DNA of 64,000 bases from the NCBI GenBank assembly GCA_964247055.1, contig OZ176051.1, positions 1,302,001 to 1,366,000 of the forward strand, in the 5' to 3' direction. A model generated the notes under the pieces. The model did no database searches, was not told where the DNA came from, and saw nothing but the letters and a program-made list of their open reading frames with translations. The position numbers and the translations under genes are program-made. Every line of letters starts with the position of its first letter. The first letter of the stretch is position 1. Source of the DNA: Paragordius varius. Lineage: Eukaryota > Animalia > Nematomorpha. This document shows positions 13,401 through 60,911 of the stretch, in pieces.

Positions 13401-16020
13401 GATGCATTTACCATTCACTTTACACCAGAGTGTACCACTGCATATATCCTGTTTTAGTTATCAAAAGTGAGATTTGATATATATCTTGTAAAATTTTAGA
13501 AAATTAAACAGTAATATTTCATATTATTTTATGTTTATATTACTGGTCAATTGTAACTCATAATCAAAATTATGAATCAAATCAGACCGTAAATTTTTTT
13601 AGAATACCATGATATATTTGATATATAATTTTAGTGTCTTTAGAGATCTAATCTTGTAATCTATTTAATAAATATTTGTGATTATTTCATAATTGTGTTA
13701 AAATTAAATTATGTACAAATAAAATATATATAGTATTGAGTATATCTCTAAAATAAATGGGAGTTATCTAAATAACAAAATTTAAATTAATAATATAATT
13801 AACCATCCAAATTTTGGGGTAGCTTGCGATTCCAAAATATTTAAGCAAAATTTTATTCAGAATATAATGGGACAAAAAATCAATTATTATAATAATTATG
13901 ACCTTAAAATTTGAAATATGTAAGGACTATATCTGTGGACGAACTTTGAATATTCATATATATAAAAATCAAATTTATATTTTTAGTACGTAAATATTAA
14001 TATATACTTCTATACCGGGACAATATGTGGTATTTGGTAGCCCCATGTTCAATTGGCATTGGTGATCTAGGTTGTATTGTGTTCCCAAAAAATCGGTGGC
14101 TATTTTGGCTTGCAAAACTGGATCGTACGGTTTAAAGTGTAAAATGGTAAAGTTTCGATAAACATCCAGAAATATTGAAGGTGTATCTATAGATTCTAAG
14201 GTTACATGTTTTATGATATGACTTAAATTATTTTCTTGTCCATCCACAGTTTTCAAATGTTGAATTAAGTGTTGAGACAAATTCTTTTCATAAGCCTCTG
14301 TGCCGATGACTGTCACGTATTGAATAAAGGGTTCAATATATAATAAAATTGATTCTTTTTCTATGATAGTTTTTGGTGGATGGGAGGAGGACATATTGTC
14401 GCCGTTTGCCATTAAACAATCTGCATTTTGTTTTTGAATGAAACCAGTTAACTCTTGATAACTACAGTTTGACCATATAAGATCGGCCTCTAAACTTTGC
14501 GGTAACTGAGAATCCATAATGTATGTCATTTTTTTGGATTCATTATTTTGCTTTTTTTGAATTCGATTATTAACATTGTGCCTTAAACAAAATTCCATTG
14601 TATCATGTTTCATACCTAATCTAACACCAACGCCAATAGATGGCCAATATATAAACTTATTCAAAAAAAATTATTTTATTTAAGACCGATAAATGCAAAA
14701 ACGTTAATTTTGAATTTATTATTTTGGATGTCATATTTTACAGTAAAACTTTTGTATTAGATAAATTATTTTGTGTTATTAAGATTTAAAACCCCATATA
14801 ATATTAATTTTGAAACCATGAAATACTTTATTAATATTTAAAAAATGGTTTTATTCCTAAATACATTCATAGCAAAAAATTATATCTAAGTAAGATAATC
14901 TCTTTGTCATTTAGACTGGGATTCCCAGACCGTTTACACACCTTTAAATCCAGGTTATAAAGTAAAATACAGTATTTTTACCTTTTATATTTATAAAGTA
15001 TTTGGTTTTTTCATAAGCATCTTATTAATTTTCTTTTGCTCAAAAGTATTCCCCCAAAATTTTTTTTATCTCAAGGAAGTAAAAAAAGGAAAGAAATAAT
15101 GTACAAATGTCCGATCTCATGAGCAATAGTGAATGCTGTGCTTAGTCCAGTATCTTCTGCAATAACACAACTTCTGCCATTCTGACAAATGGAACCGACT
15201 TCGGCCATCCCTAAAGTATTACAAGGCGTGTAATTCTGAGCGCATAAATCTAATCTAGTAGATTAAACATCCTTAAGAATGTGAAATCAACTTTTTATTT
15301 ATTAAACGAACATTTTTTAAAATATAATTGTTCAGTTTATTTACCTCATTTCTAAATGTTAAAATTGCAAAAAATAATTCTATGAAGGAAAAAATATTTT
15401 GTTAGCATGATGGCCACGTGATAAGATGGAACCAACTGACTTTCATTGAATAATGTGTATTGCCAAGCACAGAAGCTTTTTAGGTAATCATCGGCATTGA
15501 TTGTCATATTAACGGATTTAGGCTTAATGTTATAAAATCAAAACTCTGATTATAAAATAATTTTATTAAAAAAATTAAAAAATTTAAAAATTACGATTGT
15601 CTTCAAATGTATCATAGAGTTCCATTCTATGGTAAGAGGGAATCCGAAACTTGAGCGTTTAAATATGGAGTTAACCTTAATGTATAAATAATGTTCATTT
15701 CATAAAAATATTAATGAAAATAAAAAAGCTAACCAAAATTTGAATGGATTTAGGAAGGTTGGAATTGTTTATGAAATTAAAAAACTTAAAATTTACCGGA
15801 GTATATGTAGATATTGACTTACCGAATGCATCAAAGTATATATGTAAGCTTCAACATCATAGTTTTTGTAATGCAAAACAAAAGATTGATCAGTAAAAAC
15901 TATGGCTTTGATTATCATCGCCTCTAACATTGTGGATGTGATGTGGGACGCAGAATCTTCTGTAATAGAATTAGCGTAGATTATATAAAAACATTGCAAA
16001 CTCAAAATCAGAAAATGTAT
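10459..16020 (-). pseudogene. ADAMTS-family metalloprotease, copy U2, disrupted
   Basis: Same exon set. The signal-peptide ATG reads ATA at 16018-16020. Tyr>TAA at 11203-11205 (ANYL to AN*L) in the spacer exon. Confidence 0.87.
12712..12964. mobile_element. MITE family A, ADAMTS intron 6, U2
   Basis: Same termini and position as in U1. Confidence 0.72.
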
Positions 16021-19424: not shown

Positions 19425-22400
19425 TTAGTTACAAGGGCACGGTCTAGAAACCAAAGGTTTTTGTTTATATCGAGAACAGACGCTATCATCAATTAAATCT
19501 TTTAGCGACGGGTCTTTGACACAAAAAACTGACCGATACTGTAATGTTGGGCTGAAATATAGAGAGGATTCATTTTTCGAATGGTATGATGGAAAAGTTG
19601 TATTAGCTTCCTTTGTTGTTTCGCGGCAGAAACAAGGTTGCCAGTATCCTAACCACCAAAAAGGGAGACAAGTAAAATTATTGCATTTTCGGGATAAAGT
19701 TGCTTTGGGTTTTGGTTGAGGACAAAGTTTATCGCTCACTTTGAGTCCAGATATGGAATTGGCACAGAAATAACCCTTATTTTGTGTGCCACCCAATTTG
19801 TTGTTATTAGAATTTTCAAAACTACATTTTTTATTGCATGGACTCCAATCAGTTAATGCCCAGATGTATGATGCGTTGGTGGGATCATTGGAATCTAAAC
19901 TTATGTTTGACTTTACAGTTTTGTGATAATAGGTGACAGATATATTGATCGAAACATTTAACTGAGTAATAAGAACATACACAATCAGATCTTTTTCGAG
20001 TGGACCCACGATAGAAATAAATTCTTGCTGACTTTTTTTGGTTGAAGTATAGTTATAAACTACGGCTTTTACAGCTGATGAGGTTTTTACCCTATGCGTC
20101 CCAAACCATGTGATTGTTAAATTGCCATTAAGCATATATTCAGCATCTTGTGCATATGTTAGAGCTAAATAATTAGCATTCTCACTCATTTCTTGAATGG
20201 TTATTTGTGTTGAATCTTTTGGAATGGTTGCTACACTCAAATACGAGCTTGCATTGTTCTCCAAAAAACTATCCTCAACTTGACTTGTGTTGAGAAAAAC
20301 ATAATTTTCCACTTTTTTGCAATTTTTATTGCGTCCATCACAGATGAGACAATTATCTTTCTTAGCACGGCTCTCGAGTCGTCGATCGCAAGCTATCGGA
20401 TGACAACGCCCTTCTATACAAACACCATCTATATATATAAAACAAACAAATCATTTAAGATAAAAAGAAATGGTTAATAAGCTTAAAGAGTTTCCTATTA
20501 TCCAGCTTTTGTTAAATAAAACTGGCGGAGTTCATGAAAATCGTTTATTTTACTTATTCACCGTTTACCCCATTGAAAAATATATTTTTAACCAATAATT
20601 GTAATATATTTGCTAAATAAATTTTACTTACTGTATTCAATATCACTTTTAATTTCTAGTGGTGTGTGTTCAAAACTAGCAATGCCCATATTACACAAAG
20701 TCCCATCTCGTAAACTATGAGCATAGGAATCGATCATTTCTAAGCTAACATTTTTCGTAATATTTGGATGTGAAATTAAACTTTGCGATTCATTGAGTTT
20801 TTCCTCGTTTGGCACGGATGATTGATATTCCGATTGAATATTTTTGCAGTTTAAATGACAGGCAGGGGCGCCATACATGATGGTTTGATAGTCAAAAATC
20901 CAAGTTGAATTACATATTCCTTTAACTTTACATCCATACTCCTGACATTGGTAATTAGGATTGTATTCTGCTTAAATAGATTTTGATTGATTATAAATTA
21001 ATTACAGTAAAATTTAAATTATACGGACAAAATGTAAAAATATAAAGACAATTTTTTTTTTCAAAAGACAACCATACTTTTTTAAACCTTAATTTATCCT
21101 ATAAAAAACATTTTTACAATCCTAAAATTAATAAAATTGATTGTGATACTAATTTACATTTCTATATTATACTTTGTAGTTTAAAACAATGAGTTTTATT
21201 TAAAAAAATCAAGATTAAAAAAATATGGTTGTCTTTTCGAAAAAAAATTTGTCTTTATGTTTTCACGTTTTGTCCGTATAATCTCTATTTAAAATGTTTT
21301 TTGCCAGAGTTCCAATAATAATAACACTTTTAAAAATTTTTTTTACATTTATAACACACCAAATAAGAAAAATATAGATTATAATATATTTTAATGCCAT
21401 CAGATACAAATTTATTGTTGACCCTAAAATAATATTATCAATATTTTGAGAATTTAGGTTATTCCCTTCTTGCAAGGTGCTTAGATGCGCCTTAATATAC
21501 GAATCTAATACTTTTAATATGATAAACGTATTGTGCAAAGCTACTCCCATACAAACGACATAAAGATATCTTTTTTTTCAATAATATTTACATAAAAAAC
21601 TTAACTTTTATTAATTACTAGTAAAAAAAATTAAACATTATACAAAAATCAGTCAAACCAGTTTTCCGTGTTTTTTTGTAAATCGGCCCTCTTTAACCTA
21701 TATTCAAATAATTTGAACATTTTAAGCTTATAATAAACACGTGATTTTATTTTAATTGGTGAATTTTGTACATATACTCGTCTACCAAAATTAATACGAT
21801 CTTTAGACATTATCTTATTTGATTTAATTTTATATCTGAGTAAATTGATATATTTTAGATTAAATTATTAAAGGAATGAAATAATGTTGGAAAAGTTAAT
21901 AAAATAAATAAAAAATTTGAAACACACTTTTCAATGGTTATAGCTACAAAGGGGGAAAACTTAAACTGAACCAACTGTTAATGAAATGCATAACCGTTAA
22001 AAAATAAACAAAACTTATTATATTACAAATAAGATTGTTTGATATTACCTTTATACTCCTTTTCTTTCTTACAATCCTTTAAGTTGCACGTTTTATACCG
22101 GGTTTTTCGACCAACACAAAAGGTCCCGTCGTTTGTCGGACTTTATTAATTTATAAGACATTATAACTTCAATAATACCATTTACAGTTCAAATTCATCT
22201 TCAAACAATTTAAATTCATTACCTATATTTTTTCAATTTTTTTTAAAAAAAAATTCGTTTAAAATTAATCTAAACTGAAAAAAATAATAAACTATGCCAT
22301 AAGATAATTTTCTCATTTATGATGAGTTATATTAGCCCGACAAGACAATTCATTTTTAGGGTGAATTTGAATTGTTCAGGGGTTAAAATGTTTAAGGGTG

Positions 22401-25400
22401 AATTTGAATTGTAAATGTATATTATAAAATCTGATTTTAGAAAAAAAAGTATATTAAAAAATTGATTCTTTAGTGAATATTGGTTATAAAATATTTTTAA
22501 TCGAAATATTACATTGTACATTAGGGGCTAAGACTACAAAACCTTAATTTGGTAAATATTGTAAAATCATCATCTACACCATATTAATCAAATTAGAAAA
22601 TATACATGATAAATAAATTATCATCAAAACAATTTATCTTAATTTTCCTAAACCATAAAAAAATCACATGGGATTATCACATGCCCGAGTTGATTTGGAA
22701 AGACCTATACCGCAAGATTTACTACAAGCTGTCCAAGGGCCCCAATGTCCCCAATTACCTATTTGCTGGAAAGTTTTATCATTAAGTTGTCTGAGATTCT
22801 GAGTTACTGCAATACATTCCTTGTTGAAACACCATTTATTAACTCCACAATAGGTGCCATCCTCAACCATTTTCATTTTACTGATGCATTTACCATTCAC
22901 TTTACACCAGAGTGTACCACGGCATATATCCTGTTTTTGTTATCAAAAGTGAGAAATTTTGAGAAAATTTATAAATAATGAACCGGTAATATACTATTCA
23001 TATTATTTTATGTATTGTAAAATATTGCTGGTCATCTTTAACTCATAATCAAAATTATAAAAATCAGACCGTAAAAGAATACTATAATATATTATAAAAT
23101 TTTAGTGTCTTTAGAAATTAGTCTTGTAATCTAGTTATATATTTGTAAATATTTCACAATTGTGTTAATATTAAATTTTGTACAAATAAAATATAACCGT
23201 TAAAATTCAATAAAGCCTAATGCCCCCCCCCCCCCCAGAAGTCCGAAGGACTTACTCGGACTGCGTAGTAGCACGAGATTTGCACTAGTATTCATATATA
23301 TATATATATATATATATAAATCAAATTTATATTTTTATTACGAAAATTTTAACATATACTTCTATACCGGGACAGTATGTGGTATTTCGCAGCCCCATGT
23401 TTAATTGGCATTGGTGATCTAAGTTGTATTGAGTTCCCAAAAAATCGGTGGCTATTTTGGCTTGCAAAACTGGATCGTACGGTTTAAAGTGTAAAATGGT
23501 AAAATGTCGATAAACATCTTGAAATATGGAAGGTGTATTTATGGAGTCTAGGGTTACATTTTGTATGATATGATTTAAATTTTTTTCTTGTCCATCCACA
23601 GTTTTCAAATGTTGAATTAAGTGTTGAGACAAATTCTTTTCATAAGTCTCTGTGTCGATAACTGTTACGTATTGAGTAAATGGTTCAAAGTATAAAAACA
23701 TTGATTCTTTTTCTATGATAGTTTTTGGTGGATGGGAGGACATATTCTCGCTTTTTGCTTTTAAACAATCTGCATTTTGTTTTTGAATGAAACCGGTTAA
23801 CTCTTGATAACTACAGTTGGACCATATAAGATCGGCCTCTAAACTTTGCGGTAACTGAGAATCCATAATGTATGGCATTTTTTTGGATTCATTATTTTGC
23901 TTTTTTTGACTTCGATTATTAACATTGTGCCTCAAACAAAATTCCATTGTATCATGTTTCATACCTAATCTAACAACAATAAAAGTAAATAATAAAAAAA
24001 ATATTTTAATTACACCGATAAATGCAAAAATTAATTTGAATTTTTATTTTGGATGTCATATTTTACAGTAAAACTTTTGTTGTAGATAATTTATTTTTTA
24101 ATAAGTATTAAAACAGCATTTAATATTAATTTTGAAAACATGAAATACTTTATTTACAGTAATTGTTATAATTAATATTAAGAATATTTATTTTAATCCA
24201 TGTGGGTTTTTTTTATCGTTTTAAAAGTTGTTTTACAATCATATAAAAAATAACACTTACATATTTATTTAAATGAACATACATGTTCCTTTTCGGTACA
24301 CATATATGAGAGATATATTAACAATGCAATATGTTCCCCTTCTCGCTACATATCTTATTAGAGAAATGGTAACATTGATGTGTTGTGCCAAAAATGGTGT
24401 TTACCATTCCTAAATACATTTATAGCAAAATAACATCTTAAATGGATCATCTCTTACTGGGATTTCTGAAGTAAAATACAGCATTTTTGTCCTTTATATT
24501 TAAAGTATTAGGTATTTTCTTAAGCATCTTGTTAATTTTCTTTTGCTCAAAAATATTCCCCCCAAATTATTTTCATTACTATCTCAAGTTTAAATAAAAG
24601 TAAAAAAGGAAATAATAATGTACAAATGTCCGATTTCATGTGCAATAGTGAATGCTGTGCTTAGTCCAGTATCTTCTGCAATGACACAACTTCTGCCATT
24701 CTGACAAATGGAACCGACTTCGGCCATTCCTAAAGTATTACATGGCGTGTAATTTTGAGCGCATAAATCTAATCTGGTACAAATGATTTTAACATCTATA
24801 AGAATGTGAATTCAACTTTTTATTTATTAAACGAACTTATTTAAAATATAATTGTTCAGTTTATTTACCTCATATCTAAAAGTTATAATTGCAAAAAATA
24901 ATTCTATGAAGGAAAAAATACTTTGTTAGCATGATGGCCACATGATAAGATGGTACCAACTGACTTTCATTGAATAATGTGTATTGCCAAGCACAGAAGC
25001 TTTTTAGGTAATCATCAGCATTGATTGTCATATTAACTGATTTAGGCTTATTTATATACAATAGTTGATTATATAATAATTTAAATAAAAAAATTAAAAA
25101 ATTTAGATATTACGATTGTCTTTAAATGTATCATAGAGTTCCATTCTATGGTAAGAGGGAATCCGAAACTTGAACGTTTAAATATGGAGTTAACCTTAAT
25201 GTATAAATAATGTTCATTTCATAAAAATATGATAAAATAAAAAAAGCTACAAAATTTGAATGGATTTAGATAGGTTATTGTTTTTAAAATTACAAAACTA
25301 CAAATTACCGGAGTATATGTAGATATTAACTCACCGAATGCATTAATGTATATATGTAAGCTTCAACATCATAGTTTTTGTAATGCAAAACAAAAGATTG

Positions 25401-25532
25401 ATCAGTAAAAACTATGGCTTTGATTATCATCGCCTCTAACAATGTGGATGTGATGTGGGACGCAGAATCTTCTGTAATAGAATTAGCGTAGATTATATAA
25501 AAACAATGCAAACTAAAAAGCAGAAAATGCAT
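19425..25532 (-). CDS. ADAMTS-family metalloprotease, copy U3, apparently intact, 9 exons
   Basis: [18 protein letters not shown] signal peptide, HEIGHLLGMKHD, Met-turn YIMD, WSNCS, TSP1 [15 protein letters not shown], Cys-rich and spacer motifs. No stop or frameshift was found in any exon; GT-AG sites are present. Confidence 0.88.
22172..22423. mobile_element. MITE family A, ADAMTS intron 6, U3
   Basis: Same family termini and repeats. Confidence 0.7.
23196..23288 (+). mobile_element. Deleted Helitron remnant (3' end only), U3
   Basis: Retains an internal accgttaaaattcaata fragment, the poly-C tract, both hairpins and CTAG|T. Confidence 0.78.
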
Positions 25533-34633: not shown

Positions 34634-34760
34634 CTTCAATACCGTATTGGTATGGGGTAGGGGAGGTGAAATATTGTTTTTATGAAAAAGGACATTACAA
34701 ATATTCACTTCAACAATATTATTCATGGCGCCCAGATACCTTTGAATGGGAAAGAATTGT
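34634..34760 (+). other. 127-bp templated insertion copied from the partner ORF at 28559-28685
   Basis: Shares the copy-specific variants AAAGGACAT and GATACCTTTGAATGG with the 28525 copy only. Confidence 0.9.
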
Positions 34761-36575
34761 TCATTATTTTGCTTTTTTTGAATTCGATTAACATTGTCCC
34801 TTAAACAAAATTCCATTGTATCGTGTTTCATACCTAATCTAACACCAAAAACAATAGATGGCCAATATATAAACTTATTCAAAAAAAATAATTTCAGTTA
34901 AGACCGATAAATGCAAAAACCTTAATTTTGAATTTATTATTTTGGATGTCATATTTTACAGTAAAACTTTTGTTTTAGATAAATTATTTTTTGTTATTGA
35001 GATTTAAAACCGCATATAATATTAATTTTAAAACCATAAAATAAATCAGATATGTTTAGAACGGGAAAAATACTTTATTTATATTCAAGTGGTTTTCCTA
35101 AACACGCAAAATTACATCTTAGAAAGGTCATTTCTAAGTCATTTAGACTGGGATTCCCAGGGCGCTTACACACCCTTATATCCTAGGTATTAAGTAAAAT
35201 ACACCATTTTTGCCCTTTATATTTAAAGTATTAAGTATTTTCTTAAGCATCTTGTTAATTTTCTTTTGCTCAAACATATTCCCCCAAATAATTTTTTTCC
35301 TATCTCAAGTTTAAATAAAAGTAAAAAAAGGAAAGAAATAATGTACAAATGTCCGATTTCATGAGCAATAGTGAATGCTGTGCTTAGTCCAGTATCTTCT
35401 GCAATGACACAACTTCTGCCATTCTGACAAATGGAACCGACTTCGGCCATCCCTAAAGTATTACAAGGCGTGTAATTCTGAGCGCATAAATCTAATCTGG
35501 TACAAATGATTTATTAAACAAACAATTTTTAAAATATAATATTTCAGATTTACCTTATTTGTAAATGTTATAATTGCAAAAAAATAATTCTACGAAGGAA
35601 AAAATACTTTGTTAGCATAATGGCCACGTGATAAGATGGAACCAACTGACTTTCATTGAGTAATGTGTATTGCCAAGCACAGAAGCTTTTTAGGTAATCA
35701 TCAGCATTTATTGTCATATTAACGGATTTAGGCTTAATGTTATAATATTTGATTAAATATAACCGATTTATCAAAAATTTAAAATGAATTTGTTAAATAA
35801 ATTTAAAAATTACGATTGTCTTCAAATGTATCATAGAGTTCCATTCTATGGTAAGAGGGAATCCCAAACTTGAACGTTTAAATATGGAGTTAACCTTAAT
35901 GTATATATAATGTTCATTTCATAAAAATATTAATGAGAATAAAAAAGCTAATCAAAATTTAAATGTATTTAGGAAAGTTGGAATTGTTTATGTAATTTAA
36001 AAACTTAAAATATACCTGAGTATATGTAGATATTGACTTACCGAATGCATCAAAGTATATAAGTAAGCTTCAACATCATAGTTTTTGTAATGCAAAACAA
36101 AAGATTGATCAGTAAAAATTATGGCTTTGATTATCATCCCCTCTAACATTGTGGATGTGATGTGGGACGCAGAATCTTCTGTAATAGAATTAGCGTAGAT
36201 TATATAAAAACAATGCAAACTAAAAAGCAAAAAATGCATTTTTAAATACTTTTAACTTAACGTAAAAGATTTTTTTTCTTACAATCGCATCGCACCAAAT
36301 GTTATTCAGAATATGCTGCATTAACTTAATACTTGCTTTAATTAATGAATATATTCAATGGCTCATATTTCCATACTTATGACTATATGAAAAGTACACA
36401 CTCTATTTGTATCTACATTGATATAAAAGTTAATTGTTTATATCAAACACAATAACATTAATTTGAGTGTGGGAAATGGAAGTTAGTATGGTATGGTGAG
36501 ATGTTGACTGTTTTATTGAAAACGCGTTACGCAGTTTGATTAAATTTACACTTGTTTTGTCGCGTACAATTCGCC

Positions 36576-49195: not shown

Positions 49196-49252
49196 TTTAA
49201 ATTTTACTGTTAATATATAATTTTATAAGAACGTATTTACTATTTTAGAATT

Positions 49253-49853: not shown

Positions 49854-50856
49854 TTATTTACAAGGGCACGGTCTAGACACCAACGGTTTTTGTCTATATC
49901 GAGAACAAACGCTATCATCAATTAAATCTTTTAGCGAGGGGTCTTTAACACAAAAAACTGACCGATACTGTAATGTTGGGCTTAAATAGAAAGAGGATTC
50001 ATTTTTCGAATGGTATGAAGGAAAAGTTGTATTAGCGTCTTTTGTTATTTCGCGGCAGAAACAAGGTTGCCAGTATCCTAACCACCAATAAGGGAGGCAA
50101 GTAAAATTATTGCATTTTCGGGATAAAACAGCTTTAGGTTTTGGTTGAGGACAAAGTTTATCGCTCACTTTGAGTCCAGATATGGAATTGGCACAAAAAT
50201 AAGCCTTATTTTGTGTGCCACCCCATTTGTTGTTATTAGAATGCTCAAAACTACATTTTTTATTGCATGGACTCCAATCAGTTAATGCCCAGATGTATGA
50301 TGCGTTGGTGGGATCATTGGAATTTAAACTTATGTTTGACTTTACAGATTTGTGATAATAGGTGATAGATATATTGATCGAAACATTTAACTGAGTAATA
50401 AGAACATAAACGATCAGATCTTTTTCGAGTGGACCCAGGATAGAAATAAATTCTTGCTGACTTTTTTCAGTGGAAGTATAGTTATAAACTACGGATTTTA
50501 CAGCTGATGAGGTTTTTACCCTATGCACCCCAAACCAGGTGATTGTAAAATTGCCATTAAGCATATATTGGGCATCGTGTGCATAAGCCAGAGCTAGATA
50601 ATTAGCATTCTCACTCATTTCTTGAATGGTTATTTGTGTTGCATCTTTTGGAATGGTTGCTACACTCAAATACGAGCTTGCATTGTTCTTCAAAAAACTA
50701 TCCTCAACTTGACTCGTGTTAAGAAAAACATAATTTTCCACTTTTTTGCAATTTTTATTGCGTCCATCACAGATGAGACAATTATCTTTCTTAGCGCGGC
50801 TCTCGAGTCGTCGATCGCAAGCTATCGGATGACAACGCCCTTCTATACAAACCCCA

Positions 50857-50914
<58 letters not shown>

Positions 50915-53900
50915 AAAACATCATTTAAGATAAAAAGAAATATTAATAAGCTTAAATACTTTCCTAATATCTAGCTTTTGTCAAATACAAACTGGCGGAC
51001 TTCGAAAAAATCGTTTATTTAATCTTTCCCTGTTTACCGATTAAGAAAAATATAGTTTAACCAATATTTGTAATATATTTGCCAAGTAACTTTTACTCAC
51101 TGTATTCGATTTCACTTTTAATTTCTAGTGGTGAGTTTTTAAAACTAGCACCCCCCATATTACGCAATGTCCCATCTCGTAAACTGTGAGCATATGAATC
51201 AATCATTTCTAAGCTAACATTTTTCGTAATATTTGGATGTGAAATTACACTTTGCGATTCATTGAGTTTTTCCTCGTTTAGCACGGATGATTGATATTCC
51301 GATTGAATATTTTTGCAGTTTAAATGACAGGCAGGGGCGCCATACATGATGGTTTGATAGTCAAAAATCCAAGTTGAATTGCATATTCCTTTAACTTTAC
51401 ATCCATACTCCTGGCATTGGTAATTAGGATTGTATTCTGATTAAATATATTGGAATTCATTATGAATTAATTACAGTAAAAATGTAAATTATACGGACAA
51501 AATGTAAAAATATAAAGACAAATTTTTTTTTAAAAAATCAAGATTAAAAAAGTATGGTTGTTTTTTTTTCAAAAAAATATTTGTCTAATTCGTTTCATAT
51601 AATTTTATTTTTTACTGTTGTTGATAAAAATATGCTTTGCCAGAGTTCCTATATAATAACAATTTGAAAATTATAATTATAGGTTTTTATACATTTACAT
51701 ATAAGTCGAATTAAGCACCAAATAAAAATATAGATTATAATATATTTCAATGCCATCAACACAAATTTATCGTTGATCCTAAAAATAATATTATCAATAT
51801 TTGAGAATTCAGGTTATTCTTTCTTGCAGAGTGCTTAGATGCGACTTAATATACGACAAATTCCATATTTAGACTCTAATCTAAACGAAAATTTATTACG
51901 TTTAATATGATAAACTTATTGTGCAAAGCCTTTCCCATACAAACGACATAAAGATATCTGTTTTTTTAAATAATATTTACATAAAAATACTTAACTTTTA
52001 TTAATTATAATGTTTTCATAATATTACCTTCATACTCATTTTCTTTCTTACAATCCCTTAAGTTGCATGTTTTATAGCGGGTTTTTCGACCAACACAAAA
52101 GCTTCCATCGTTTGTCGGACTTTAATAATTTATTAGATATGATAAAATATAACTTCAGATATACCATTTACAGTTCAAATTCACCCTTAAACAATTCAAA
52201 TTCACCCTTGAATTTAACTTCAAATGTACCATTTACAGTTCAAATTCATTGTAAAATTAAAATTAAAAATTACCTATATTTTTTTTGATTTTTAAAAAAT
52301 GAAATTTCGTTTAAAATTAATATAAATACTAAAAAAATAATAAACTATGCCATAAGATATATTTTTTATTGATAATATAATTTCCCGAAAACACGTAATT
52401 CATTTTTAGGGTGAATTCAAATTGTTCGAGGGTGAATTTGTTTTAAATGGTATTTTACTAATTCTGATTATAGAATAAAGAGCATATCAAAAAAATTGAT
52501 TCTTTATTACATATTGGTTATAAGATAATTTTAATCAAAAACTTTTTACATAAAACTAAATACCTTAATTTGGAAATTATTGTAAAATATAAAATACCAT
52601 ATTAATCAAATTTGAACATATAAATGATAAATAAATTATCATTTGATCAAAACAATTTCATTTATCTAAATTTTCCTAAACCAAAAAAAAAATTACATGG
52701 GATTATCACATGCACGAGCTGATTTGGAAAGACCTATACCGCAAGATTTACTACACGGAGTCCAAGGGCCCCAATGTCCCCAATTTCCTATTTGCTGGAA
52801 AGTTTTATCATTAAGGCGTCTGAGATTCAGAGTTACTGAAATACATTCCTTGTTGTAACACCATTTATTAACTCCACAATAGGTTCCATCCTCAACCATT
52901 TTCAATTTACTGATGCATTTACCATTCACTTTACACCAGAGTGTACCACTGCATATATCCTGTTTTCGTTATCAATCAAAAGTGAGAAAATTTTACAAAA
53001 ACGGTAATATTTCATATTATTTTATGTTTTGTAAAATATTACTGATCATTTTTAACTATAAAAATCACACCGTAAAATTTTTTAGAATACTATAATATAT
53101 TTGATATAAAATTTTAGTGTCTTTTGAAATCTAGTCTTGTTAGTTAGTTATGTATGTATTTGTAAATATTTCATTGTGTTAAAATTAAATTTTGTACAAA
53201 TAAAATATATATTATTGAGTATATCTCTAAAATAAGAGTTATCTAAACAACAAAATTTAAATTAACAGAAAATAAATTACCACCTTTTGGGACAAAAAAA
53301 TCAATTATCATAATAATTATGACCTATGAATTAAATTAATTAAAAATGAAATATGTAAGGCTTATATCTGTGGACGAACTTTGAGTCTATATATTTATAA
53401 AAATGGAAAATGCTGGCTTTGTGATCTGTTTCCGGAAAACCGGTGGACCCATTCAAATCCAAATATCGAAATAATTATTAATGAATGCCCCGACAATGGC
53501 TTCGCCTTTTTTGAATTAGGGCCCCAGTTCGGGTCCACCCCGTGTAAAAAACGGGTTTTTTTTGAAAATCTGTCCTTAAAAATCGTGTATTTGAGACAAT
53601 TTTCCGGAAAACTTGTTGGACTATTTGATTTCAAATATAATTTTTTTTACTTATTTTTGATTGCGCCGAACATAGTCGGCTCGTTTTTTTAATTTAGGCC
53701 GTTTTTTTACCCGCTCCCCCCGTAAAATGCCATTTTTTTTCCACAAAAATAATTTTTTGATTTTATTTTTCGACCAAGGTATGAGACCGTTAAAATTCAA
53801 TAACGCCATGTATTCCCTGTGAAAAGGCAAAAAATTTATTTAAGCTTTTTCTTTCATGATAGCCGCTGGGTAGGAAACTACCTGCGAAAAACTGACCCGT

Positions 53901-56332
53901 CAAATCAAAATAGTGTGCTTTGGGGCTAAATTTCAGAAAACCTATGAGGCCATATGAGTTTAATAGTTGCTTAAAGTATTACCCGTAAAAAGTCAAAAAT
54001 TTTATTCGAGCGGATTTTTCGAATTAGCTGTTAAATAGGTCCTTTGATCTCCAAAATAATGCGCTATCATTGAACTATTATTTATTTTTGAAGCCATTTT
54101 TCCATAAACTATTAGGAATAAATCATGATTCCAGGTATAAAGGCAATTACTAACTACATTTTTATAATGGCCTCTTAGTATGGGGCTACCCGCCTACAAC
54201 TGCGCATCATATCGATACAGCATGCCTTTGACAAATTTCAGAATATGAGACCATCTGAATCATTTTGAAACTTCGTGCCGCATAACATTGCTTATAAAAT
54301 CGAAAATCCCCCCCCCCCCACCCAGAAGTCCGAAGGACTTACTCGGGCTGCGTAGCAGCACGAGATTTACACTAGTATTCATATATATATATATAAATAA
54401 AATTTATATATTTAGTAGGAAATATTAATATATACTTCTATACCGGGACAGTAAGTGGTATTTCGCAGCCCCATGTTTAATTGGCATTGGTGATCTAGGT
54501 TGTATTGTGTTCCCAAAAAATCGGTGGCTATTTTGGCTTGCAAAACTGGATCGTACGGTTTAAAGTGTAAAATAGTAAAGTTTCGATAGGTATTTTGAAA
54601 TATTGAAGGTGTATATATGGAGTCTAGGGTTACATTTTTTATGATATGATTTAAAATTTTTTCTTGTTTCTTCACAGTTTTCAAATGTAGAATTAAATGT
54701 TGGGACAAATTTTGTTCATAAGTCTCTGTGTCGATGACTGTCACGTATTGAGTAAATGGTTCAATGTATAATAACATTGACTCCTTTTCTATAATAGTTT
54801 TTAGTGGATGGGATGACAAATTTTCGCTATTTGTCTTTAAACAATCTGCATTTTGTTTTTGAATGAAACCGGTTAACTCTTGATAACTACAGTTGGACCA
54901 TATAAGATCGGCCTCTAAACTTTGGGGTAACTGAGAATCCATAATGGATGGCAGTTTTTTGGATTCATTATTTTCCTTTTGTTGAATTCGATTATTAACA
55001 TTGTGCCTTAAACAAAATTCCATTGTATCATGTTTCATACCTAATCTAACAACCACAATAGATGGGCAATATACAAATTTCAAAAAAAATAAATTTCAGT
55101 TAAGACCGATAAATGCAAAAACTCATATTTTACAAAAACTTTTGTTTTAGATAAATTATTTTTTGTTAGCAAGTATTAAAACCGCATGTAATATCAATTT
55201 CAAAACCATGAAATAAATCCTATGCTTATAAAATGTTTTTTACCATTCCTAAATACATTTATAGCAAAATAACATCTTAAAAAGATAATCTTTTAGTCAT
55301 TTAGACTGGGATACCTGAAGTAAAATACAGCATTTTTACCCTGTATATATAAAGCTTTAAGTATTTTCTTAAGCATTTTAATAATTTTCTTTTGCTTAAA
55401 AATATTCCCCCAAAATATTTTTTTCCTATCTAAAGTTTAAAATCAAGTAAAAAAGAAGGAATAATGTACAAATGTCCGAGTTCATGTGCAATAGTGAATG
55501 CTGTGCTTAGTCCAGTATCTTCTGCAATAACACAACTTCTGCCATTCTGACATATGGAACCGACTTCGGCCATTCCCAAAGTATTACAAGGCGTGTAATT
55601 CTGAGCGCATAAATCTAATCTGGTAAAAATGATTTATTAAACGAACTTATTTTTTAAAATATAATTGTTCAGTTTATTTACCTCATTTCTAAAAGTTTTA
55701 ATTGCAAAAAAAAATACTTTGTTAGCATGATGGCCACATGATAAGATGAAACCAATTGACTTTCATTGAATAATGTGTATTGCCAAGCACAGAAGCTTTT
55801 TAAGTAATCATCAGCATTGATTGTCATATTAACGGATTTAGGCTTAATTATATACAATTATTGATTATAAAAAAAATTATTAAAAAAATTAAAAAATTTA
55901 AAAATTACAATTGTCTTCAAATGTATCATAGAGTTCCATTCTATGGTGAGAGGAAATCCGAAACTCTCACGTTTAAATATGGAGTTAACCTTAATATATA
56001 AATTATGTTCATTTCATAAAAATATTAATGGGAATAAAAAAAGTTAACCAAAACCAGAATGGATTTAGAAAGGTTATTGTTTATAAAATTAAAAAACGAA
56101 AAATTTACCGGAGTATATGTAGATATTGACTTACCGAATGCATCAAAGTATATATGTAAGCTTCAACATCATAGTTTTTGTAATGCAAAACAAAAGATTG
56201 ATCAGTAAAAACTATGGCTTTAATTATCATCACCTCTAACATTGTGGATGTGATGTGGGACGCTGAATCTTCTGTAATAGAATTTGCATAGATTAGATAA
56301 AAACATTGCAAACTCAAAATCAGAAAATGCAT
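49854..56332 (-). CDS. ADAMTS-family metalloprotease, copy U6, intact, 952 aa
   Basis: Exons 56135-56332, 55909-55989, 55718-55842, 55470-55619, 54436-55045, 52697-52959, 52028-52119, 51101-51436 and 49854-50857 sum to 2859 nt (953 codons including stop). All phases are compatible. The zinc motif is HELGHLLGMKHD. Confidence 0.92.
50859..50914. repeat. (TA)n microsatellite abutting the last-exon splice acceptor of ADAMTS U6
   Basis: About 28 TA units with one G. The other units have 1-5 units here. Confidence 0.95.
52159..52453. mobile_element. MITE family A, ADAMTS intron 6, U6
   Basis: Same family; the left terminus (taccatttacagttcaaattca) is duplicated. Confidence 0.7.
53386..54375 (+). 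mobile_element. Non-autonomous Helitron, U6
   Basis: Same termini and position as in U1 and U5. Confidence 0.85.
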
Positions 56333-56665
56333 TTTTAAATACTTTTAACTTAATGTAAAAGATTTTTTTCTTACAATAGCATAGCACCAAATGTTATTCA
56401 CTAATATGCTGCATTAACTTAATGCTTGCTTTAATAAATGAAACTATTCAATGGCTCATATTTCCATACTTATGCCTATATGAAAAGTACATACTCTATA
56501 TGTATCTACATTCATATACATTGTTGCAAAAGATAATTGTTTATATCAAACACAAACACATTAATTTGAGTGTGGGAAATGGAAGTTAGTATGTTGACTG
56601 TTTTATTCTGAACGCGTTACGTAGTTTGAGTAAATTTACACTTGTTTTGTCGCGTACAATTTGAG

Positions 56666-56928
56666 ATGGAAACAGATAATAATGAAATGGGGAATGAACA
56701 AAAAGGTCCTCCTCCGGTCTTACCTCCCCCATATAAGGAAACCCAAGCTCCAATGTTGGAAAACAATAATGGAGCCATTATATATCCAAATACTACCCAA
56801 TTAATAACGCAAAATCAAACATCGGCTGCTTTTCAGAATGGTTATTTAAAATAAAATAATATTTTTTTGCAGGATACCATCATCATGGCATTCCTCAACC
56901 CGTTTTTTATCCGCCACATCCACCTGTG
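56666..56928 (+). CDS. Partner gene exons 1-2, U6
   Basis: METDNNEMGNEQKGPPPVLPPPYKE... plus cag|GYHHHGIPQPVFYPPHPPV|gt. Confidence 0.6.
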
Positions 56929-60296: not shown

Positions 60297-60356
60297 ATTT
60301 TAAAAATTTACTGTTAATATATAATTTTATAAGAACGTATTTACTATTTTAGAATT

Positions 60357-60911
60357 ATGAGTTTTAACAATTTAACATTGGTCGCGTTAACTTCAATACC
60401 GTATTGGTATGGGGTAGGGGAGGTGAAATATTGTTTTTATGAAAAAAGACATTACAAATATTCACTTCAACAATATTATTCATGGCGCCCAGATACTTTG
60501 GAATGGGAAAGAATTGTTTTAACCGAAGATCAGCTGACGAAAAAAATTGAACCCTTTTATAGTCATTATATATTACATATAAAATATCCAGAAATTAGAG
60601 AAATCATATACAGTAATAGTTATAAGGAACAAGATTATTCAAATGTTAATGGTAATGATAGGAATAAAGTTGCAAACATCATTAAAGAATATGTTGAAAA
60701 ATACAAAGCCATGCAGAATAATCAATTGAAAACTGCTATAAATTCATTGCCAATCAAATTATTTGAACAGTCTACGGATGTAACCAGAGATCTTACAAAT
60801 GTAGATCTTATCGATGATTCGACTGAAATTTTTTCCAGAAAATTTAACAGTTGGTGGCTTTTTACAGAATGTTATTTCAATAATCCGTTGTATACCATGA
60901 ATATGCATTAA
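60357..60911 (+). CDS. Partner terminal ORF/exon (184 codons), U6
   Basis: Intact ORF homologous to the other copies. Confidence 0.78.
   Translation: MSFNNLTLVALTSIPYWYGVGEVKYCFYEKRHYKYSLQQYYSWRPDTLEWERIVLTEDQLTKKIEPFYSHYILHIKYPEIREIIYSNSYKEQDYSNVNGNDRNKVANIIKEYVEKYKAMQNNQLKTAINSLPIKLFEQSTDVTRDLTNVDLIDDSTEIFSRKFNSWWLFTECYFNNPLYTMNMH

What the first reader, a model, noticed from the sequence alone, without database searches (positions are those of the whole stretch)
56135..56332. ADAMTS with no prodomain: signal peptide runs straight into the catalytic domain
Seen: exon 1 encodes MHFLILSLQCFYLIYANS, about 14 residues, then [31 protein letters not shown]|VNSIFK. This aligns by eye with the first strand/helix of the M12B domain (consensus-like YVETLVVADxxMxxFHGxxLxxYILTLMNxVxxIYK). 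There is no RxxR furin site, and the divergent gene starts only about 330 bp upstream, leaving no room for prodomain exons. Known: ADAMTS normally carry a roughly 200-aa prodomain removed by furin; ADAMTS13 has an unusually short one. Inference: the enzyme may be active on secretion or may rely on a trans-acting chaperone or inhibitor.
Basis: partly seen in the sequence, partly recalled or inferred. Interest (0 to 1): 0.72.

Follow-up and report, generated by a model that had tools for sequence, protein, structure and literature searches.

The report
Hairworm ADAMTS protease lacking a prodomain
A horsehair-worm gene for a secreted matrix-cutting enzyme (ADAMTS type) appears to lack the usual "safety-catch" prodomain, a relative in another hairworm has the same layout, and no RNA data could be checked.

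Summary
Window 56332-56135 (minus strand) is the first of nine GT-AG exons of an intact 952-codon ADAMTS gene. It encodes a signal-peptide-like N-terminus (about 18 aa) and a 17-aa linker, then the first strand and helix of the M12B catalytic domain. The exon has no arginine, so no furin site, and no cysteine outside the signal peptide. An in-frame TAA lies just upstream of the ATG.

A prodomain HMM built from 33 classical relatives found nothing in any reading frame of the 64 kb window or of the 31 kb orthologous locus. A catalytic-domain control found exon 1 in all six copies.

The only close relative is Gordionus (Nematomorpha) XP_065312848.1. It has the same layout, conserved intron positions and a shared insert between the catalytic and disintegrin-like modules.

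The gene is one of at least seven tandem ~10 kb copies. Only copies A (this one) and D are intact, with dN/dS 0.23 overall and 0.10 in the catalytic domain.

The literature searched describes no prodomain-less ADAMTS. A Hydra RefSeq model from another subfamily looks like an independent case.

Verdict: a new variant of a known kind, of moderate interest.

The parts
56135..56332 (-). Exon 1 of ADAMTS copy A: ATG, signal-peptide-like residues 1-18, 17-aa linker, and start of the M12B catalytic domain (first strand and helix)
56333..56665 (.). 333-bp spacer between the ADAMTS ATG and the divergent plus-strand ORF. An in-frame TAA at 56345-56347 closes the ADAMTS frame upstream of the ATG
55909..55989 (-). 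Exon 2 (27 codons, catalytic domain). The Gordionus gene has an exon of the same size and position
55718..55842 (-). Exon 3 (catalytic domain, FCAWQ ... AIMLT)
55470..55619 (-). Exon 4 (catalytic domain up to HELGH). 82% identical to Gordionus
54436..55045 (-). Exon 5: completes the zinc motif HELGHLLGMKHD, then Met-turn, end of the catalytic domain, a lineage-specific insert of about 105 aa, and the start of the disintegrin-like module
52697..52959 (-). Exon 6: rest of the disintegrin-like module (ADAMTS_CR_2) and first half of the central TSP1 repeat
52028..52119 (-). Exon 7: second half of the central TSP1 repeat
51101..51436 (-). Exon 8: cysteine-rich region
49854..50857 (-). Exon 9: end of the Cys-rich region, spacer 1, two C-terminal TSP1 repeats, and the stop codon (49854-49856)
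19437..25532 (-). Copy D, the only other fully intact ADAMTS copy in the window (all nine exons open, same lengths, GT-AG kept)
56666..56851 (+). Divergent ORF with a PPPY motif and no family match. It is kept open in all six units

Best explanation
Copy A (56332-49854, minus strand) is a functional gene for a secreted ADAMTS metalloprotease of the ADAMTS7/12 lineage that has lost the whole prodomain.

Shown:
- The gene has nine exons and 952 codons. Its layout is signal-peptide-like N-terminus, 17-aa linker, complete reprolysin-type catalytic domain with HELGHLLGMKHD and a Met-turn, a lineage-specific insert of about 105 aa, disintegrin-like module, TSP1, Cys-rich region, spacer and two TSP1 repeats.
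- There is no propeptide-like sequence, furin site or cysteine switch.
- The same layout occurs in a second hairworm genus.
- The two intact copies are under purifying selection.

Inferred:
- The protein enters the secretory pathway through the N-terminal signal peptide.
- Signal peptidase (probably cutting after Ala-Asn-Ser18) leaves a mature enzyme whose N-terminus is only about 10 residues longer than that of a furin-processed ADAMTS.
- The enzyme therefore folds without an intramolecular chaperone and is not a zymogen. This resembles ADAMTS13, whose short prodomain is dispensable.
- Control of activity would then rest on expression, the ancillary domains or substrate, or separate inhibitors.
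For: - Gene model: every intron is GT-AG, the exons total 2856 nt in frame, and the junctions reproduce the orthologue's sequence.
- Domains, exon by exon: Reprolysin, ADAMTS_CR_2, TSP_1, ADAMTS_CR_3, ADAMTS_spacer1, TSP1_ADAMTS.
- No propeptide: Pfam scan of 73 upstream minus-strand ORF pieces. A custom prodomain HMM against 4121 six-frame ORF pieces of the window plus L001 gave a best E of 1.3, whereas the catalytic control found exon 1 in six of six copies.
- Exon 1 has 0 Arg, a single Cys inside the signal peptide, a hydrophobic core at residues 4-14, Ala at -3 and Ser at -1, and an upstream in-frame TAA.
- Orthologue P0151 (Gordionus, 924 aa): signal peptide, about 20 aa, then the catalytic domain, with no PF01562. 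Intron positions are shared.
- Seven of the nine nearest other relatives carry PF01562.
- AlphaFold model: first strand at residues 40-49, catalytic domain pLDDT above 90, TM-score by target 0.82-0.85 against ADAMTS1/4/5.
- dN/dS between copies A and D is 0.23 overall and 0.10 in the catalytic domain.
- The tree places the orthologue in the ADAMTS7/12 clade with support 95/85.
- The review PMC4448532 states that pro-ADAMTS13 needs no prodomain removal and that its prodomain is not needed as a chaperone.
Against: - There is no transcript or protein evidence for this gene.
- No SignalP-type predictor was available, so the signal peptide rests on simple rules.
- A consensus-like acceptor (ttctattacag|AAG) lies inside exon 1 at codons 20-21, so an alternative upstream first exon cannot be excluded.
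- ADAMTS prodomains are poorly conserved, so a very divergent one could escape an HMM.
- Five of the seven copies are damaged, and copy E has lost this very ATG. The array is therefore partly decaying.
- The hairworm branch in the tree is long (2.74), so the subfamily placement is not secure.
Confidence: 0.78

Rival explanations
1. Split zymogen. The prodomain function is not lost but is supplied in trans. The same genome (and Gordionus) is reported to carry small genes encoding stand-alone ADAM-like prodomains, which could chaperone and/or inhibit the prodomain-less ADAMTS after secretion.
For: An earlier scan note, s1-257546, reports stand-alone prodomain genes in this hairworm genome and one in Gordionus (an unverified AI note). 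The two species said to have prodomain-only genes are the same two in which I find a prodomain-less ADAMTS. From general knowledge, isolated ADAM prodomains can inhibit their proteases in trans.
Against: I could not read or test those genes, because they lie on another piece of the genome. They are described as ADAM-like, not ADAMTS-like. There is no co-expression or interaction evidence. The ADAMTS13 precedent shows that no prodomain is needed at all.
Confidence: 0.12
2. Incomplete gene model. The real transcript has further 5' coding exons (alternative first exon, distant exons) that encode a divergent prodomain, and the signal-peptide-like start is fortuitous or belongs to a minor isoform.
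For: There is no RNA evidence. A plausible acceptor lies inside exon 1. Gordionus has a second annotated isoform with a different start (P0001). Hairworm introns can be kilobases long.
Against: No propeptide-like ORF piece exists in 64 kb here (six upstream contexts) or in the 10 kb upstream of the Gordionus gene. The signal-peptide-like start is present in both species and aligns collinearly. The space upstream holds a divergent ORF at 333 bp and further genes. The alternative Gordionus isoform is shorter, not longer.
Confidence: 0.08
3. The internal insert between the catalytic and disintegrin-like modules has taken over the prodomain's role, as an internal chaperone or latency element.
For: The insert is shared by the two hairworm proteins, which both lack the prodomain. 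It is absent from classical relatives. It is under purifying selection, with dN/dS 0.29.
Against: The insert does not match the prodomain HMM (the exon 5 ORF piece was among the targets) or any Pfam family. Its pLDDT in the model is below 50, with no defined packing. Hydra lacks the prodomain without having such an insert.
Confidence: 0.03

Closest known systems
ADAMTS7/ADAMTS12 subfamily (MEROPS M12B, ADAMTS)
   Same: Reprolysin catalytic domain with HExxHxxGxxHD and a Met-turn, disintegrin-like module, central TSP1, Cys-rich region, spacer and C-terminal TSP1 repeats. The orthologue falls in this clade in the tree, and RefSeq calls it 'ADAMTS12-like'.
   Different: It has no prodomain and no furin site. 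No mucin or PLAC module was detected, and there are only two C-terminal TSP1 repeats. An insert of about 105 aa separates the catalytic and disintegrin-like modules.
ADAMTS13
   Same: It is the known ADAMTS with the most reduced prodomain. Cleavage of that prodomain is not required for activity, and it is not needed as a chaperone (PMC4448532). That is a working precedent for an ADAMTS that folds and acts without a classical prodomain.
   Different: ADAMTS13 still has a short prodomain with a furin site. The hairworm gene has only a 17-aa linker with no basic site and belongs to another subfamily.
Gordionus sp. XP_065312848.1 / CAK9293471.1 (annotated 'ADAMTS12-like')
   Same: It is the orthologue. 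It has a signal peptide, about 20 aa, then the catalytic domain, with no PF01562. It shares the insert and the intron positions. Identity is 43% in the last exon and 82-86% in the zinc-site exon.
   Different: It is single-copy at its locus, with different neighbours. Its insert is longer, about 165 aa. An extra intron splits the signal peptide. The database entry carries only the generic name and no remark on the missing prodomain.
Hydra vulgaris XP_012557771.2 ('ADAMTS7 isoform X1')
   Same: It is a predicted signal peptide, about 37 aa without a furin site, then the Reprolysin domain. Neither the current model nor the older model has PF01562.
   Different: It groups with ADAMTS17/19 in the tree, so it is probably an independent loss. 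It has no catalytic-disintegrin insert.
ADAMTS-like proteins (ADAMTSL, papilin)
   Same: They also lack a prodomain, and they share the TSP1, Cys-rich and spacer modules.
   Different: They lack the catalytic domain altogether. This gene has an intact, constrained one.

Membership tests
ADAMTS (M12B) | Reprolysin-type catalytic domain with the zinc motif HExxHxxGxxHD and a Met-turn | tested here: met
   HELGH|LLGMKHD runs across the exon 4/5 junction, and the invariant Met is in SIMDSQL. Reprolysin family hits and catalytic HMM hits on exons 1, 3, 4 and 5.
ADAMTS (M12B) | Disintegrin-like module following the catalytic domain | tested here: met
   ADAMTS_CR_2 matches split over exons 5 and 6. 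It is separated from the catalytic domain by an unusual insert.
ADAMTS (M12B) | Central TSP1 repeat, Cys-rich domain, spacer | tested here: met
   TSP_1 E 1.7e-6, ADAMTS_CR_3 E 0.002, ADAMTS_spacer1 E 4.9e-17.
ADAMTS (M12B) | N-terminal signal peptide | tested here: inconclusive
   Hydrophobic core at residues 4-14 (mean Kyte-Doolittle 2.2), with Ala at -3 and Ser at -1. No dedicated predictor was available.
ADAMTS (M12B) | Prodomain (Pep_M12B_propep) ending in a furin-type site, as stated for all ADAMTSs in PMC4448532 | tested here: not met
   No PF01562, no custom-HMM hit and no Arg in exon 1. The gene is therefore filed as a homologous member by its catalytic and ancillary domains, but as a variant that lacks the canonical zymogen architecture.
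ADAMTS7/12 subfamily | Phylogenetic placement of the catalytic and disintegrin-like region | tested here: inconclusive
   The orthologue P0151 lies inside a clade with fish ADAMTS12, insect ADAMTS7-like and Limulus/Asterias 7/12-like proteins (support 95/85), but on a long branch of 2.74. The window gene itself was not put in the tree.
ADAMTS7/12 subfamily | Mucin-like domain and C-terminal PLAC domain | tested here: not met
   No PLAC (PF08686) or other module after the two C-terminal TSP1 repeats, either in exon 9 or in the orthologue.
ADAMTSL / papilin | Absence of the catalytic domain | tested here: not met
   The catalytic domain is present and constrained.

The most novel reading that the evidence does not exclude
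Hairworms have turned an ADAMTS zymogen into a two-gene system. One gene encodes a prodomain-less protease, amplified in a tandem array. Separate genes encode stand-alone M12B-type prodomains that act in trans as chaperone or inhibitor. This would be a natural 'split zymogen', possibly tied to the parasite's tissue invasion or its exit from the host.
Probability: 0.12. Interest if true: 0.8.

Novelty: new variant of a known kind. Interest (0 to 1): 0.5.

Why it matters
Prodomains are treated as a universal feature of ADAMTS, ADAM and snake-venom M12B proteases, serving folding, latency and trafficking. The review read here says that all ADAMTSs carry a furin-type site.

A natural ADAMTS that is kept under purifying selection in two hairworm genera without any prodomain would show that the full ADAMTS fold can mature without an intramolecular chaperone. 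It would also give a simple natural construct for expressing active ADAMTS enzymes.

It raises the question of how a parasite controls an enzyme that is never a zymogen. Together with the reported prodomain-only genes in the same genome, it makes trans-regulation directly testable.

Tried and rejected
- The word-index protein search with exon 9 and with exon 1 found nothing within the allowed length bands. These blanks only show that this species' protein is not in that collection.
- phmmer of exon 1 against PDB sequences gave only a chance hit.
- BLASTP of the 27-aa exon 2 against the orthologue was too short to score. Its correspondence rests on equal exon size and position.
- The look-up of encoding contigs had no record for isoform P0001.
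- Other hits with a short N-terminus (P0181 Asterias, P0029, P0045, P0076, P0078, P0096 and others) were rejected as examples. They lack a signal peptide or keep a furin remnant, so they are truncated models.
- The older 1000-aa Hydra model has an N-terminal extension without any propeptide match.
- The idea that the catalytic-disintegrin insert is a relocated prodomain was not supported.
- The literature searches found no paper describing an ADAMTS without a prodomain and no mention of metalloproteases in two hairworm genome papers.
- The spliced protein model was never joined for any search, fold or tree. Exons were searched one by one by reference, and the orthologue P0151 stood in for it. 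Only inside the script were the exons of copies A and D concatenated in memory, to keep codon phase for dN/dS.

Full report
**What is at the coordinates**

The window is very AT-rich, about 27-28% GC.
- a hydrophobic N-terminus, MHFLILSLQCFYLIYANS;
- then [31 protein letters not shown].

The exon ends at a GTAAGT donor. The frame is closed by a TAA at 56345-56347, four codons before the ATG.

**Gene model**

Guided by open frames and by the orthologue, I defined nine exons:

| Exon | Coordinates (minus strand) |
|---|---|
| 1 | 56332-56135 |
| 2 | 55989-55909 |
| 3 | 55842-55718 |
| 4 | 55619-55470 |
| 5 | 55045-54436 |
| 6 | 52959-52697 |
| 7 | 52119-52028 |
| 8 | 51436-51101 |
| 9 | 50857-49857 (stop at 49856-49854) |

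- All eight introns are GT-AG, and the exons sum to 2856 nt, or 952 codons, in frame.
- The junctions recreate conserved sequence, for example HELGH|LLGMKHD and YCPGIE|DICSG, as in the orthologue.
- Exon-by-exon Pfam scans give Reprolysin-type hits, ADAMTS_CR_2, TSP_1, ADAMTS_CR_3, ADAMTS_spacer1 (E 4.9e-17) and TSP1_ADAMTS.
- The gene is therefore a bona fide ADAMTS-type protease gene with an intact zinc site and Met-turn.
- Exons were searched one by one by reference.

**Is exon 1 really the start of the catalytic domain?**

- Exon 1 aligns collinearly with residues 9-71 of the Gordionus protein P0151 (E 9e-7).
- It also aligns with the Limulus ADAMTS7-like protein P0004 directly after its RTKR furin site (E 6e-5).
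- A catalytic-domain HMM built from 33 classical relatives hits the exon-1 ORF piece in all six copies (E 4e-4 to 1e-2 among 4121 ORF pieces).
- After a signal-peptidase cut at Ser18, the mature N-terminus would lie about 17-19 residues before the first strand. In the furin-processed P0004 the distance is about 8 residues.

**Is there a prodomain anywhere?**

- Pfam found no Pep_M12B_propep in the 73 minus-strand ORF pieces (20 aa or more) between the ATG and the next ADAMTS copy.
- A 245-state prodomain HMM was built from the same 33 relatives and run with all filters off against every six-frame ORF piece of 15 aa or more, in the whole window and in the 31 kb Gordionus locus. Its best E-value was 1.3. 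Because the window is a tandem array, this covers six independent upstream contexts.
- Exon 1 has no arginine in any copy, so it has no RxxR site. Its only cysteine lies in the signal peptide, so there is no cysteine switch.
- Upstream, a plus-strand ORF starts 333 bp away at 56666. It has a PPPY motif and no family match, and it stays open with only in-frame length changes in all six units.
- Further upstream are CCDC28-like exons on the plus strand and a VTI1-like SNARE exon on the minus strand.

**Relatives**

- An exhaustive HMMER search with exon 9 found 596 relatives.
- The best is a Gordionus sp. (Nematomorpha) protein at 43% identity. Its RefSeq/ENA isoform P0151 (XP_065312848.1, 'ADAMTS12-like') reads signal peptide, about 20 residues, then catalytic domain, without PF01562.
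- Seven of the nine nearest other relatives have PF01562. One of the remaining two is N-terminally truncated.
- In the Gordionus locus L001 the intron positions match those of the window gene, including the same 27-codon second coding exon. An extra intron splits the signal peptide there.
- L001 has 26.7% GC, in line with the 26.9% published for Gordionus montsenyensis, whose annotation used RNA-seq.
- Earlier scan notes also call this genome a hairworm genome.
- No protein of the window's own species is in the collections.
- An AlphaFold model of P0151:1-480 with a 60-row alignment has a confident catalytic domain whose first strand is residues 40-49. Residues 1-30 are unstructured.
- The model superposes on whole mature ADAMTS5/1/4 structures, with TM-score by target 0.82-0.85.
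- A maximum-likelihood tree puts P0151 in the ADAMTS7/12 clade (support 95/85), on a long branch.

**Array and constraint**

The window holds seven copies of a ~10 kb unit. Projection of the exons gives this status:

| Copy | Status |
|---|---|
| A | Fully intact |
| D | Fully intact |
| B | +1 frameshift in exon 9 |
| C | Exon 5 interrupted by a 128-nt piece of a neighbouring ORF, -1 frameshift in exon 7, and a stop |
| E | ATA instead of ATG, an AT donor at exon 3, and a stop |
| F | A stop in exon 5 and a CG acceptor at exon 8 |
| G (partial) | Two damaged acceptors and a stop |

Between copies A and D, dS is 0.16 and dN/dS is 0.23 overall. By region, dN/dS is 0.10 in the catalytic domain and 0.29 in the insert. 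At least these two genes have therefore been kept functional since they duplicated.

**Mechanism**

- Shown: the domain layout, the absence of any propeptide-like sequence or furin site, conservation in a second genus, and purifying selection.
- Inferred: co-translational secretion through the N-terminal signal peptide; a mature enzyme that folds without an intramolecular chaperone and is not a zymogen; and regulation by expression, by the ancillary domains, or by separate inhibitors.
- The precedent is ADAMTS13, whose short prodomain need not be removed and is not needed as a chaperone (PMC4448532).

**Rivals**

1. *Trans-acting prodomain proteins.* An earlier, unverified scan note reports stand-alone ADAM-like prodomain genes in this genome and in Gordionus. 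I could not read them.
2. *Missed 5' exons.* This cannot be excluded without RNA, and a consensus-like acceptor lies inside exon 1. It is made unlikely by the negative HMM searches in seven upstream contexts and by the conserved signal-peptide start.
3. *The catalytic-disintegrin insert as a substitute.* The insert is about 105 aa here and about 165 aa in Gordionus, and it is absent from other relatives. It has no prodomain or Pfam similarity, and its pLDDT is below 50.

**Novelty**

- The review read here states that all ADAMTSs have a furin-type site and names ADAMTS13 as the extreme of prodomain reduction.
- Full-text searches found no description of a prodomain-less ADAMTS.
- In the databases, one further genuine-looking case exists: a Hydra RefSeq model with signal peptide, about 37 aa, then the catalytic domain. 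It groups with ADAMTS17/19 and so is probably an independent loss.
- Other short-N-terminus hits are truncated models.
- I rate this a new variant of a known kind, of moderate interest, limited by the lack of transcript and biochemical evidence.

Noticed in passing
window 1-64000: The whole window is a tandem array of seven ~10 kb units (spacing 8.97-11.1 kb, 88-97% identity). Each unit carries an ADAMTS gene, a divergent PPPY ORF and a 192-codon ORF. Only ADAMTS copies A and D are intact, and five copies carry frameshifts, stops, a lost start codon or lost splice sites. A note about a CCDC28/VTI1 pair 1.5 kb before the window start hints that related sequence continues to the left.
   Followed up: partly
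window 54470-54800 (within exon 5); P0151 residues 255-405: A lineage-specific insert lies between the end of the catalytic domain (CLK) and the start of the disintegrin-like module. It is about 105 aa here and about 165 aa in Gordionus, and it is absent from classical ADAMTS and from Hydra. It is under purifying selection (dN/dS 0.29), has no family match, and is modelled at pLDDT below 50.
   Followed up: partly
window 60333-60908 (+) and copies at 49229, 39101, 28501, 18795, 9829: A 192-codon ORF with no convincing family match recurs in every unit, convergent with the 3' end of the next ADAMTS copy. It is better conserved (96-97%) than the ADAMTS exons. Two copies are frameshifted. A 128-nt fragment of it sits inside exon 5 of ADAMTS copy C (34634-34761).
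   Followed up: partly
   Followed up: partly
window 50868-50925: A (TA)n microsatellite fills the end of intron 8 right up to the acceptor of exon 9. It makes the mechanical ORF start about 22 codons too early.
   Followed up: no
P0123 / XP_012557771.2 (Hydra vulgaris): A Hydra RefSeq ADAMTS model also runs from the signal peptide through about 37 residues without a furin site into the Reprolysin domain. It groups with ADAMTS17/19, which suggests an independent prodomain loss in a cnidarian.
   Followed up: partly
window 16018-16020 (copy E) and 25440-25442 (copy D): In copy E the start codon is ATA. In copy D the internal Met31 codon is TTG. If copy E is translated at all, it would start downstream of the signal peptide.
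   Followed up: no
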